Program-made: the position numbers and the translations under genes
In this document: positions 22,517 through 63,884 of the stretch, in pieces
Position numbering within the stretch: the stretch's first letter is position 1
How the letters are laid out: each line of letters starts with the position of its first letter
The notes under the pieces: generated by a model
Database searches by the model: none
Told to the model about the DNA's origin: nothing
Seen by the model: the letters and a program-made list of their open reading frames with translations, nothing else
Source of the DNA: Octopus sinensis
Lineage: Eukaryota
Reading direction: 5' to 3'
NCBI RefSeq assembly: GCF_006345805.1
Contig: NC_043012.1
Span: 36,766,001 to 36,830,000, forward strand
Length of the DNA stretch: 64,000 bases

Positions 22517-22717
22517 ATGGACAAGATTCTTCAGTTTTTGCAACTTCTCCTTATTTTGGAAGTTGTCTCTTCTCGTGAATGCTACTTGAGGAATTTGCCT
22601 GAGAAATGGTGCAACAAAGAGATGAAAATATTATTTGACGAAAGTCAGAAGTGGGAAACTTTTAATTGTTCAAACCAAGATTGTGGTTCCAAGATCATGT
22701 TCTTCAATAATGATGAG
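22517..22717 (+). CDS. Plexin-like exon 1: signal peptide plus start of Sema remnant
   Basis: Acceptor ttccag at 22514 then ATG; [19 protein letters not shown] is signal-peptide-like; ECYL..W.NKE..CG follows; phase-0 non-canonical donor GAG|GCAAGT at 22718. Confidence 0.65.

Positions 22718-63884: not shown

What the first reader, a model, noticed from the sequence alone, without database searches (positions are those of the whole stretch)
22517..63884. Mini-plexin: receptor with most of the Sema domain and half the stalk deleted
The hand-built model joins a signal peptide directly to ECYL..W.NKE..CG. That segment aligns by eye to the CY..W..NKE..CG region lying about 370 aa into plexin-A Sema domains. 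Only the last blades ([14 protein letters not shown]) remain, then one degenerate PSI, three IPT domains and the TM. The ectodomain is about 500 aa, versus about 1200 aa (Sema + 3 PSI + 6 IPT) in canonical plexins. The Sema propeller binds semaphorin and autoinhibits plexins (established), so this could be a semaphorin-independent, constitutive or repurposed GAP receptor (inference). The cytoplasmic part is unmistakably plexin but very divergent, suggesting a lineage-specific paralog.
Basis: partly seen in the sequence, partly recalled or inferred. Interest (0 to 1): 0.88.

Follow-up and report, generated by a model that had tools for sequence, protein, structure and literature searches.

The report
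Sema-less octopus plexin with dead GAP
The window holds most of a real, conserved octopus gene for a half-size plexin-family receptor with no detectable semaphorin-binding (Sema) domain, and its enzyme-like tail has lost the residues needed for catalysis, so it probably signals without enzyme activity.

Summary

**What is there**
- Window 22515-63884 (+) carries coding exons 2-22 of a 30-exon, single-copy Octopus sinensis gene.
- NCBI already models it as "plexin-B2-like" (XP_029646225.1, 1086 aa). I rebuilt that protein exactly from the genome.
- Architecture: signal peptide, about 205 aa of fast-evolving sequence with no detectable homology, three IPT domains, one TM helix, then a very divergent plexin RasGAP/RBD tail.

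**No Sema domain**
- No Sema or PSI signal by Pfam, profile HMM, hhalign or tblastn within 100 kb either side.
- The compact 19-kb Argonauta ortholog and three complete transcripts from unidentified organisms (970-992 aa) also lack one.

**New point: the GAP looks dead**
- The arginine finger is Ser682.
- The second catalytic Arg is Gln950.
- Both Rap switch-II asparagines are replaced (Gln954, His958). Argonauta and O. bimaculoides share these changes.
- The tail is nonetheless strongly constrained: dN/dS is 0.05 in GAP-C1, against about 0.9 in the IPT stalk.

**Placement**
The protein sits on a very long branch inside a mollusc-only, plexin-B-derived clade. It is most likely a non-catalytic (pseudoGAP) receptor or scaffold, not a constitutive GAP.

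The parts
22515..22717 (+). Coding exon 2 (aa 13-80). Holds the ATG at 22517, the signal-like hydrophobic segment (aa 14-32, 22517-22573) and the Cys-containing N-terminal cap [22 protein letters not shown]. Its donor is GC (22718-22719).
   Evidence: The Argonauta and P0009 models start at the same Met.
26500..26592 (+). Coding exon 3 (aa 81-111), N-terminal module of unassigned fold.
   Evidence: E[IL]F[VL][YW]EN is conserved in Argonauta.
28327..28407 (+). Coding exon 4 (aa 112-138), N-terminal unassigned module.
30039..30140 (+). Coding exon 5 (aa 139-172, '[19 protein letters not shown]'), N-terminal unassigned module. Predicted beta-rich at low confidence.
   Evidence: No Sema similarity.
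33498..33602 (+). Coding exon 6 (aa 173-207, '[11 protein letters not shown]'), N-terminal unassigned module.
34323..34369 (+). Coding exon 7 (aa 208-223), start of the Cys-rich stretch [19 protein letters not shown].
   Evidence: No PSI hit.
36951..36993 (+).
38913..39049 (+). Coding exon 9 (aa 238-283), first half of IPT-a ([10 protein letters not shown] = the P..G..GG start motif of IPT domains).
42108..42260 (+). Coding exon 10 (aa 283-334), second half of IPT-a and start of IPT-b. The TAG|CAG tandem acceptor gives isoforms X2 and X3.
43170..43226 (+). Coding exon 11 (aa 334-353), IPT-b.
45771..45840 (+). Coding exon 12 (aa 353-376), IPT-b.
50024..50206 (+). Coding exon 13 (aa 377-437), end of IPT-b and start of IPT-c.
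   Evidence: pLDDT 80-96
52686..52832 (+). Coding exon 14 (aa 438-486), IPT-c. Pfam TIG scores 20.6 bits, just under the cut-off.
53805..54018 (+). Coding exon 15 (aa 487-558): end of IPT-c, the transmembrane helix [26 protein letters not shown] (aa 504-529, 53856-53933), and a short unconserved juxtamembrane segment.
56874..56995 (+). Coding exon 16 (aa 558-598), start of the plexin cytoplasmic domain ([16 protein letters not shown]).
59629..59750 (+). Coding exon 17 (aa 599-639), GAP-C1.
60168..60227 (+). Coding exon 18 (aa 639-659), GAP-C1.
61147..61218 (+). Coding exon 19 (aa 659-683), GAP-C1. It holds the finger-loop motif KKRIMSRFDS. Ser682 (TCA, 61214-61216) sits where the catalytic arginine finger should be.
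61398..61464 (+). Coding exon 20 (aa 683-705), GAP-C1.
62099..62245 (+). Coding exon 21 (aa 706-754), end of GAP-C1 (GPVDEVTG) and start of the RBD.
63737..63884 (+). Coding exon 22 (aa 755-804), Rho-GTPase-binding-domain (RBD) homology. This is the last coding exon inside the window; eight more follow at window coordinates 65270-79386.

Best explanation
The window contains exons 2-22 of a genuine, single-copy, protein-coding Octopus sinensis gene, auto-annotated as 'plexin-B2-like'. It is the octopod member of a mollusc-only, plexin-B-derived paralog clade.

**Architecture.** The product is a type I membrane protein of about 1086 aa:
- signal peptide;
- about 205 aa of rapidly evolving, Cys-flanked, probably beta-rich sequence of unassigned fold;
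- three IPT domains equivalent to the membrane-proximal stalk (IPT4-6) of canonical plexins;
- one TM helix;
- a plexin RasGAP-fold domain split by an RBD.

**What it has lost.**
- It has no Sema propeller, so it cannot bind semaphorin in the canonical way.
- Its GAP fold lacks the arginine finger (Ser682), the stabilising second arginine (Gln950) and both switch-II-binding asparagines (Gln954, His958).
- Its juxtamembrane dimerisation helix is not conserved.
- By the known plexin mechanism it therefore cannot accelerate GTP hydrolysis on Rap.

**What is shown.** The gene model, the architecture, the substitutions, the phylogenetic position and the selection pattern.

**What is inferred.** The GAP-C1 half is under very strong purifying selection while the ectodomain drifts or diversifies. 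From this I infer that the protein works as a pseudoGAP: a membrane-anchored, non-catalytic binder or scaffold. It could hold a GTP-bound small GTPase without switching it off, or dock onto canonical plexin tails. Its variable ectodomain would act as a semaphorin-independent, lineage-specific recognition or spacer module.
For: **Gene model**
- An exact spliced rebuild of XP_029646225.1 from the genome: 30 exons, canonical splice sites.
- Single copy in the genome.
- All annotated isoforms and orthologs are short: 1065-1092 aa, or partial models.

**No Sema**
- Pfam finds only Plexin_cytopl (5.5e-27), Plexin_RBD and a sub-threshold TIG.
- The genome-wide PF01403 scan has no hit near the locus.
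- tblastn with six Sema-bearing plexin ectodomains finds nothing in 264 kb around the gene. It also finds nothing in the 39-kb Argonauta locus, whose upstream neighbour gene ends 9.5 kb before the ATG.
- Three complete transcript contigs of relatives (970-992 aa) have in-frame stops upstream of the ATG.

**Stalk**
- A plexin profile aligns aa 268-541 to the last roughly 290 ectodomain positions plus the TM.
- AF2 gives pLDDT 70-96 for aa 240-500.
- The top Foldseek hits are the plexin-A1 ectodomain and its IPT3-6 fragment.

**Dead GAP**
- HMMER alignments to Plexin-B2, D1, C1 and B1 structures.
- Zebrafish PlexinC1 numbering from two constructs, combined with PMC3787391 (Arg711 is the finger, Arg1001 the second Arg, and mutating Asn1005 or Asn1009 sharply lowers activity).
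- A column table over 134 cytoplasmic domains: 88 are RR/RNN, the octopods are SR/QQH, and P0010 is WS/QQE.
- The Ser682 codon TCA cannot be recoded to Arg by A-to-I editing.

**Constraint**
- O. sinensis vs Argonauta identity: GAP-C1 79%, N-terminal module 22%, juxtamembrane 10%.
- dN/dS vs O. bimaculoides: GAP-C1 0.05, whole tail 0.19, IPT stalk 0.89.
- In relatives (P0010 vs P0317): ectodomain 1.16, tail 0.22.

**Phylogeny**
- IQ-TREE LG+C20: the mini clade has 100/100 support and nests in a 16-row mollusc-only clade (100/100). That clade lies inside the B-type super-clade (99/96) and is apart from the canonical O. sinensis PlexB.
Against: - No transcript or protein data for O. sinensis itself were available here. 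The exon chain rests on NCBI's model, exact genomic consistency and cross-species conservation.
- Loss of activity is inferred from residues, not assayed.
- Octopods keep the neighbouring Arg683, which could in principle shift into the finger position.
- One relative (P0318) keeps the second arginine.
- The fold of aa 33-237 is unknown (AF2 pLDDT below 50), so an extremely eroded Sema or PSI remnant cannot be excluded.
- Placement on a stem of 2.9 substitutions per site carries a long-branch risk.
- An ectodomain dN/dS near 1 fits relaxed constraint as well as diversifying selection.
- The proposed binding or scaffold role is speculation with no direct evidence.
Confidence: 0.65

Rival explanations
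1. The N-terminus is the remnant of the last Sema blades plus a degenerate PSI. Loss of the autoinhibitory propeller leaves a constitutively active, semaphorin-independent GAP receptor.
For: - The ectodomain is truly short and lacks a full propeller.
- Engineered Sema-deleted plexin-A1 is constitutively active (established knowledge, recalled, not checked here).
- The low-confidence AF2 model predicts beta strands in aa 142-224.
Against: - No Sema or PSI similarity by Pfam, phmmer vs PDB, a plexin profile HMM or hhalign (Sema region probability 0.2%).
- The cited motif is confined to Octopus species.
- The arginine finger, second arginine and both switch-II asparagines are replaced.
- The juxtamembrane helix needed for dimer activation is 10% identical between octopods.
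Confidence: 0.06
2. The domain is still an enzyme. It would be a GAP with a non-canonical catalytic arrangement, for example Arg683 acting as the finger, or with a different GTPase substrate. It would be gated by something other than semaphorin.
For: - Arg683 is retained next to Ser682 in all octopods.
- Very strong purifying selection on GAP-C1 (dN/dS 0.05) is what an active site would also show.
- Other members of the mollusc clade keep RR and the second Arg but already lack both asparagines, which suggests a shifted specificity in the clade.
Against: - The related P0010, P0317 and P0318 proteins have lost both finger-loop arginines (WS, LS).
- The second arginine and both asparagines are also gone in octopods.
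- No known RasGAP-fold enzyme works without an arginine finger (established knowledge).
Confidence: 0.15
3. It is an artefact or a dying gene. Either this is a mis-assembled or over-predicted model, or a truncated pseudogene copy of a canonical plexin with no function.
For: - Very low Pfam score for the tail (95 bits, against 285-616 in other plexin-family proteins).
- The ectodomain evolves near neutrality.
- No O. sinensis expression data were seen here.
Against: - The ORF is intact across 30 exons with canonical splice sites.
- The same exon structure and an intact ORF occur in Argonauta and O. bimaculoides.
- Tail dN/dS is 0.19, and 0.05 for GAP-C1.
- Complete mRNA-like contigs of relatives exist in three RNA data sets.
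Confidence: 0.05

Closest known systems
Canonical class B plexins (invertebrate PlexB; vertebrate PLXNB1-3, with D1 and C1 in the same super-clade), e.g. O. sinensis XP 'plexin-A2 isoform X1' (P0179, 1871 aa, same chromosome at 57.1 Mb)
   Same: - Type I topology.
- Membrane-proximal IPT stalk.
- Cytoplasmic RasGAP fold split by an RBD; the best PDB hit is Plexin-B2, 5e6p.
- Falls inside the B-type super-clade.
   Different: - No Sema, no recognisable PSI, and 3 instead of 6 IPT domains.
- The arginine finger, second Arg and both switch-II Asn are replaced.
- The juxtamembrane helix is unconserved.
- The C-terminus ...SNIFH is not the PDZ-binding motif of vertebrate B plexins (motif recalled from memory).
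Mollusc-specific divergent plexin clade, auto-annotated only: Solemya velum KAL5013522.1 (1661 aa), Patella caerulea KAK6176904.1, Haliotis asinina XP_067683732.1, Mytilus galloprovincialis XP_076112721.1 (1110 aa), Mya arenaria XP_052781261.1, Dreissena KAH3876459.1, Liolophura XP_064606083.1
   Same: - Sister or containing clade (100/100 support).
- Several members have only TIG/IPT domains plus the plexin tail and no Pfam Sema.
- All have lost both switch-II asparagines.
   Different: - Most of them keep the RR finger loop and the second arginine.
- Their Plexin_cytopl scores are 270-380 bits, against 95 here.
- Solemya still has Sema and PSI.
- The cephalopod branch is far longer (stem 2.9 substitutions per site).
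Unnamed 970-992 aa proteins from RNA assemblies SRR29271459, ERR4030425 and SRR24189505 (P0010, P0317, P0318)
   Same: - Nearest relatives outside octopods (26-29% overall BLASTP identity, about 34% over the tail; 100/100 sister).
- Same layout: signal peptide, Cys-containing cap, IPT domains, TM and a plexin tail without an arginine finger.
   Different: - An even shorter ectodomain (about 370 aa).
- Both finger-loop arginines are lost.
- P0318 keeps the second arginine.
- The source organisms are unknown.
Engineered Sema-deleted plexin-A1 (constitutively active receptor; recalled from the literature, not checked here)
   Same: A plexin without the autoinhibitory and ligand-binding propeller.
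   Different: That construct keeps the full stalk and an intact GAP. This natural protein has a GAP fold stripped of its catalytic residues.
Other naturally truncated plexin-family receptors: Met/RON RTKs (Sema+PSI+4 IPT with a kinase tail) and sponge plexins with truncated intracellular domains (PMC6374515)
   Same: They show that plexin ectodomain and tail modules are shuffled and trimmed in evolution.
   Different: Those keep the Sema domain and change or lose the tail. Here the Sema domain is lost and the tail fold is kept.
Arginine-finger-less RasGAP-fold proteins such as the IQGAP GRD (functional analogy only; recalled)
   Same: A RasGAP fold that is conserved without a catalytic arginine and is used to bind, not inactivate, small GTPases.
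   Different: Unrelated subfamily, cytosolic scaffolds. No binding data exist for the octopus protein.

Membership tests
Plexin family | Cytoplasmic RasGAP-homology domain (C1/C2) interrupted by a Rho-GTPase-binding domain | tested here: met
   - Pfam Plexin_cytopl 5.5e-27 (aa 571-1039) and Plexin_RBD 2.9e-7 (aa 747-840).
- phmmer vs PDB: Plexin-B2 1.3e-28, D1, B1, C1, A1, A3.
Plexin family | N-terminal Sema (seven-bladed propeller) domain | tested here: not met
   - No PF01403 hit at E<=1.
- No PDB plexin ectodomain hit.
- The plexin profile HMM covers only aa 268 onward.
- hhalign gives the Sema region probability 0.2%.
- No Sema exon in 264 kb around the gene.
- Only about 205 aa are available, against the 450-500 a propeller needs.
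Plexin family | PSI (plexin-semaphorin-integrin) cysteine-rich domains | tested here: inconclusive
   - No Pfam PSI hit.
- hhalign of the two Cys-containing stretches gives probability below 5%.
- The Cys spacing (C35, C45, C64, C69; C219, C228, C232) is compatible with eroded PSI-like knots, but that is not evidence.
Plexin family | IPT/TIG domains forming the stalk (six in classes A, B and D) | tested here: met
   - Three rather than six.
- Profile alignment to the membrane-proximal stalk.
- AF2 pLDDT 70-96 for aa 240-500.
- Foldseek top hits are 5l56, 5l5g and 5l7n (plexin-A IPT3-6).
- Pfam TIG scores 20.6 bits, against a cut-off of 20.9.
Plexin family | Catalytic arginine finger and second arginine of the Rap GAP site (zebrafish PlexinC1 Arg711 and Arg1001) | tested here: not met
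   - Ser682 and Gln950 in O. sinensis, identical in O. bimaculoides and Argonauta.
-, with residue roles taken from PMC3787391.
Plexin family | Switch-II-binding asparagines (PlexinC1 Asn1005 and Asn1009) that set up Rap Gln63 for catalysis | tested here: not met
   Gln954 and His958. Per PMC3787391, mutating either Asn 'dramatically decreased the GAP activity'.
Plexin family | Semaphorin binding and semaphorin-induced dimer activation | not testable with these tools
   Needs binding and activity assays. Indirectly unlikely: there is no Sema domain, and the juxtamembrane helix is 10% identical between octopods.
Class B plexins | Phylogenetic placement of the cytoplasmic domain with PlexB/PLXNB rather than PlexA | tested here: met
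   IQ-TREE LG+C20+F+G4 places it inside a 35-row B-type clade (99/96), apart from the A-type clade containing insect PlexA and carp Plexin-A2. Caveat: very long branch.
Class B plexins | C-terminal PDZ-binding motif that recruits PDZ-RhoGEF/LARG (vertebrate B plexins; motif recalled from memory) | tested here: not met
   The C-terminus is ...EKFSNIFH (Argonauta ...FASIIP). Neither is a class I PDZ ligand.
Pseudoenzymes (pseudoGAP) | Enzyme fold retained and under purifying selection while catalytic residues are lost | tested here: met
   - Fold homology.
- Catalytic residues lost.
- dN/dS 0.05 for GAP-C1 and 0.19 for the whole tail.
- Lack of activity itself was not assayed.

The most novel reading that the evidence does not exclude
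Cephalopods, or at least octopods plus an unidentified sister lineage, carry a dedicated 'mini-plexin'. Its diversifying, semaphorin-independent ectodomain would act as a lineage-specific recognition module. Its strongly conserved but catalytically dead GAP fold would signal by trapping GTP-bound Rap or Rho-family GTPases, or by poisoning canonical plexin dimers. That would be a natural pseudoGAP branch of the semaphorin-plexin system.
Probability: 0.2. Interest if true: 0.7.

Novelty: new variant of a known kind. Interest (0 to 1): 0.5.

Why it matters
- Plexins are textbook semaphorin-gated RapGAPs, and invertebrates are usually credited with two (PlexA and PlexB). The survey in PMC6374515 found two in the mollusc Aplysia.
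- This locus suggests that molluscs have a third, B-derived lineage. In cephalopods that lineage has shed the ligand-binding propeller, half the stalk and every key catalytic residue, yet it keeps its GAP fold under tight constraint.
- If confirmed, it is a natural experiment on what a plexin tail can do without catalysis and without semaphorin.
- It is also a candidate modulator of guidance or adhesion signalling in animals with unusually complex nervous systems.
- It is a warning for annotation: 'plexin-B2-like' hides a protein that fails most of the family's defining tests.

Tried and rejected
1. **AF2, full length.** The 1086-aa protein with a 6-sequence alignment gave mean pLDDT 31.6, which is unusable.
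2. **AF2, ectodomain.** With 31 sequences the three IPT domains resolved, but aa 23-237 stayed below pLDDT 50. No structural statement about the N-terminal module is possible.
3. **Sequence tests of the N-terminal module.** All were insignificant:
   - hhalign of the whole N-terminal region, the Cys cap and the Cys-rich stretch against a 20-sequence PlexB profile (probabilities 9%, 0.2% and 4%);
   - phmmer of the ectodomain against PDB, whose only 'hit' was a synthetic Symfoil protein at E=0.14.
A regex search found it only in Octopus species.
5. **Intron-position comparison.** This would have been an independent homology test against the canonical PlexB gene on the same chromosome.
6. **Organisms behind the three related transcripts.** Not identified:
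   - no paper mentions the SRA runs;
   - no named homolog turned up;
   - P0010 finds nothing exon by exon in the octopus genome.
7. **Genome-wide PF08337 scan.** It found only the two canonical plexins and missed this locus, which shows how divergent the tail is.
8. **Long ORFs in introns.** No Pfam hits, except a Pif1 helicase fragment.
9. **Literature.** Searches for natural Sema-less or pseudoGAP plexins, or for this gene in octopus papers, found nothing relevant.
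Full report
**Locus and gene model**
- The window is C16:36766001-36830000 (+) of a 2.72-Gb genome.
It is 1086 aa, and its contig length equals that of C16. An Argonauta hians ortholog (1092 aa) came back too.
- I mapped the protein back onto the window plus 100 kb of flank on each side and solved every junction. 30 coding exons, 29 GT-AG introns and one GC-AG intron translate exactly to the database protein.
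- Exon 1 (37 nt, MAKFYNSQWNFI-) lies 8.9 kb upstream of the window. Exons 23-30 run to window coordinate 79386.
- The ATG at 22517 has a purine at -3 and G at +4. It is the first codon of the Argonauta model and of a separate Octopus fragment, P0009.
Exon 2 ends at a GC donor at 22718, and two small exons (26500-26592, 28327-28407) follow.

**Is a Sema domain hiding somewhere? No evidence for it.**
- All three O. sinensis isoforms (1085-1089 aa), the O. vulgaris protein (1065 aa) and the Argonauta protein are short.
- Pfam on the whole protein at E<=1 gives only Plexin_cytopl, Plexin_RBD and a TIG just under threshold.
- A genome-wide six-frame scan with PF01403 finds Sema exons of other genes but none near this locus.
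- tblastn with six Sema-bearing plexin ectodomains finds nothing in the 264 kb. The only hit below E=0.5 is the true IPT exon at 52674-52787.
- In Argonauta the whole gene spans 19 kb with the same exon series. The upstream neighbour gene ends 9.5 kb before the ATG, and the 39-kb locus has no Sema-like match.
- Three mRNA-like contigs (3.2-3.4 kb) encoding the nearest non-octopod relatives (970-992 aa) have in-frame stops upstream of their ATGs, so those proteins are complete and equally Sema-less.
- The gene is single-copy.

**Ectodomain anatomy**
- Hydropathy shows just two hydrophobic segments: aa 14-32 and the TM at 504-529. The ectodomain has 13 N-glycosylation sequons and 14 cysteines.
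- A profile HMM built from 41 long plexins aligns aa 268-541 co-linearly with the last roughly 290 ectodomain positions plus the TM. It aligns aa 562-1085 with the tail, and finds nothing for aa 1-267.
- With a 31-sequence alignment, AF2 models aa 240-500 as three beta-sandwiches at pLDDT 70-96.
- Foldseek's best PDB matches are the plexin-A1 and A2 ectodomains, the plexin-A1 IPT3-IPT6 fragment, PlexinC1 and MET.
- So 'three IPT domains + TM' is confirmed, and by position they correspond to IPT4-6.

**The N-terminal roughly 205 aa (33-237) could not be assigned.**
- AF2 is below pLDDT 50 there.
- hhalign of the octopod N-terminal alignment against a 20-sequence PlexB profile peaks at 9% probability, on the PSI2-IPT3 region and not on Sema. 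The Sema region scores 0.2%.
- The Cys cap and the Cys-rich stretch score below 5%.
- phmmer vs PDB finds no plexin.
- The 'last Sema blades' reading is therefore unsupported. It is not strictly excluded.

**Cytoplasmic domain**
- It is unmistakably plexin, as the PDB hits to Plexin-B2, D1, B1, C1, A1 and A3 show. It is also extremely divergent: 95 bits on Plexin_cytopl, against 270-616 in the other mollusc and brachiopod plexin-family proteins scanned.
- The key new observation is at the active site.
- PMC3787391 states three things. Zebrafish PlexinC1 Arg711 is the arginine finger. Arg1001 is the second conserved arginine that positions it. Arg1001, Asn1005 and Asn1009 hold Rap switch II, and mutating either Asn sharply reduces activity.
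- The lengths of the two crystallised constructs (4m8n, 4m8m) both place Arg711 at the first R of the ...LLLRRTES... motif.
- In the octopus protein that position is Ser682, in ...RIMSRFDS....
- The LRFWVNILKNP motif reads IQMCSQFISHP, so Arg becomes Gln950, Asn becomes Gln954 and Asn becomes His958.
- Across 134 cytoplasmic domains, 88 have RR/RNN. The three octopods have SR/QQH. The relative P0010 has WS/QQE.
- Ser682 is TCA, which A-to-I editing cannot turn into Arg.
- The juxtamembrane segment forms the activating dimer helix in canonical plexins. Here it is 10% identical between Octopus and Argonauta.
- By the established mechanism this tail should not be a RapGAP.

**Evolution**
- The full-library HMMER search and cluster look-ups show that the nearest relatives after octopods are the unnamed P0010 group, then a set of mollusc proteins.
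- A careful IQ-TREE analysis (LG+C20+F+G4, 42 tails) makes octopods + P0010 a 100/100 clade on a stem of 2.9 substitutions per site.
- That clade nests within a 16-row, mollusc-only clade (100/100) of chiton, Solemya, Haliotis, Patella, Mya, Dreissena, Ylistrum and Mytilus.
- The mollusc clade sits in the B-type super-clade (99/96). It is apart from the canonical O. sinensis PlexB, which lies 20 Mb away on the same chromosome, and from the A-type clade.
- Within the mollusc clade, Solemya still has Sema + PSI + TIG. The Mytilus, Mya and Dreissena models have only TIG domains plus the tail. Ectodomain erosion therefore seems recurrent, though some of these may be incomplete models.
- The clade as a whole has lost both asparagines but usually keeps the arginines. 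Among the members examined, loss of both the finger and the second arginine is confined to the cephalopod-type branch; one unnamed clade member, P0021, has also lost the second arginine (RW/QTS).

**Selection**
- O. sinensis vs Argonauta identity: 79% in GAP-C1, 68% in C2, 52% in the RBD, 22-42% across the ectodomain.
- dN/dS against the O. bimaculoides gene (rebuilt from L024): 0.05 for GAP-C1, 0.31 for the RBD, 0.23 for C2, 0.89 for the IPT stalk.
- Between two close relatives, P0010 and P0317: ectodomain 1.16, tail 0.22.
- This is not a pseudogene. Something in the catalytically stripped GAP fold is being preserved, while the outside drifts or diversifies.

**Mechanism**
- Shown: a short, glycosylated type I receptor without a propeller and with a GAP fold lacking its catalytic set.
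- Inferred: it is semaphorin-independent and non-catalytic, and it acts through binding. It could hold a GTP-bound GTPase, or dock on canonical plexin tails, with the ectodomain as a variable recognition or spacer module.
- Rivals:
  - a non-canonical enzyme using Arg683 (0.15);
  - an artefact or dying gene (0.05).

**Known or new**
- The gene is in public annotation only under an automatic, misleading name.
- Full-text searches found no paper on natural Sema-less or finger-less plexins, or on this gene.
- The plexin evolution survey PMC6374515 reports two plexins in the mollusc Aplysia and does not describe this clade.
- I rate it a new variant of a known kind, of moderate interest.
The pseudoGAP finding partly compensates.

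Noticed in passing
window 48141-48821 (+), with related copies of its upstream part at 47961-48137 and 40216-40479: An open frame with a Pif1 helicase 2B domain (2.3e-14). It looks like a Helitron-type transposon fragment inside intron 12. The short peptide ...[28 protein letters not shown]... just upstream recurs in intron 9.
   Followed up: partly
window 22807-22900: The roughly 95 bp just downstream of exon 2 is a high-copy interspersed repeat. The 39 other matches listed, on many chromosomes, are 78-93% identical.
   Followed up: no
window 51621-52650; 52928-53620; 55267-55611 vs 55844-56188; 46860-47460: Intronic repeats:
- a 409-bp unit x2.5 (94% matches);
- a 38-bp minisatellite x18 ending about 185 bp before the TM exon;
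- a 577-bp-spaced duplication with identical ORFs;
- a 9-12-nt periodic G-rich array.
   Followed up: partly
window 22718-22719 and 42105-42110: Exon 2 uses a GC-AG intron (AG|GCAAGT). Exon 10 has a TAG|CAG tandem acceptor that explains isoforms X2 and X3. The acceptor implied for isoform X1 (+9 nt) is not preceded by AG in this assembly, which I could not explain.
   Followed up: partly
beyond the window: window coordinates 71726-71728 (Gln950, CAG), 71738-71740 (Gln954, CAG), 71750-71752 (His958, CAT): All three codons have an A at position 2. A-to-I editing, which is common in cephalopods, would recode them to Arg, so Gln950 could in principle be edited back to the second catalytic arginine. 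This is pure speculation. The finger position (Ser682, TCA) cannot be rescued this way.
   Followed up: no
L024 (O. bimaculoides CM046615.1:2986907-3036785) and protein P0009: The O. bimaculoides annotation appears to miss or split the gene's 5' part. XP_052829393.1 (837 aa) starts with a spurious first exon at the point where O. sinensis exon 10 begins. The 234-aa fragment P0009 (species not recorded) ends exactly there and covers the missing N-terminus. P0009's exons are not within the 10 kb upstream held in L024, which has 5.8 kb of N.
   Followed up: partly
proteins P0116, P0117 (830-848 aa) and P0021 (1229 aa) from the representative search: Other unnamed plexin-tail proteins also lack the catalytic arginines (TN/NSN, GK/QGS, RW/QTS in the five key columns). 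Finger-less plexin tails may therefore have arisen more than once.
   Followed up: no
G000:C16:57.10-57.26 Mb (-) and C5:81.38-81.42 Mb (+): The two canonical plexin genes of this genome. The B-type one, named 'plexin-A2' by NCBI, is on the same chromosome as the mini-plexin, 20 Mb away.
   Followed up: partly
L025 15614-15922 (Argonauta exon for aa 336-438): The Argonauta ortholog carries a roughly 45-aa Thr/Pro-rich, mucin-like insertion within the segment that aligns to IPT-b. It is absent from Octopus, and similar Thr-coding microsatellites are scattered through the locus.
   Followed up: no
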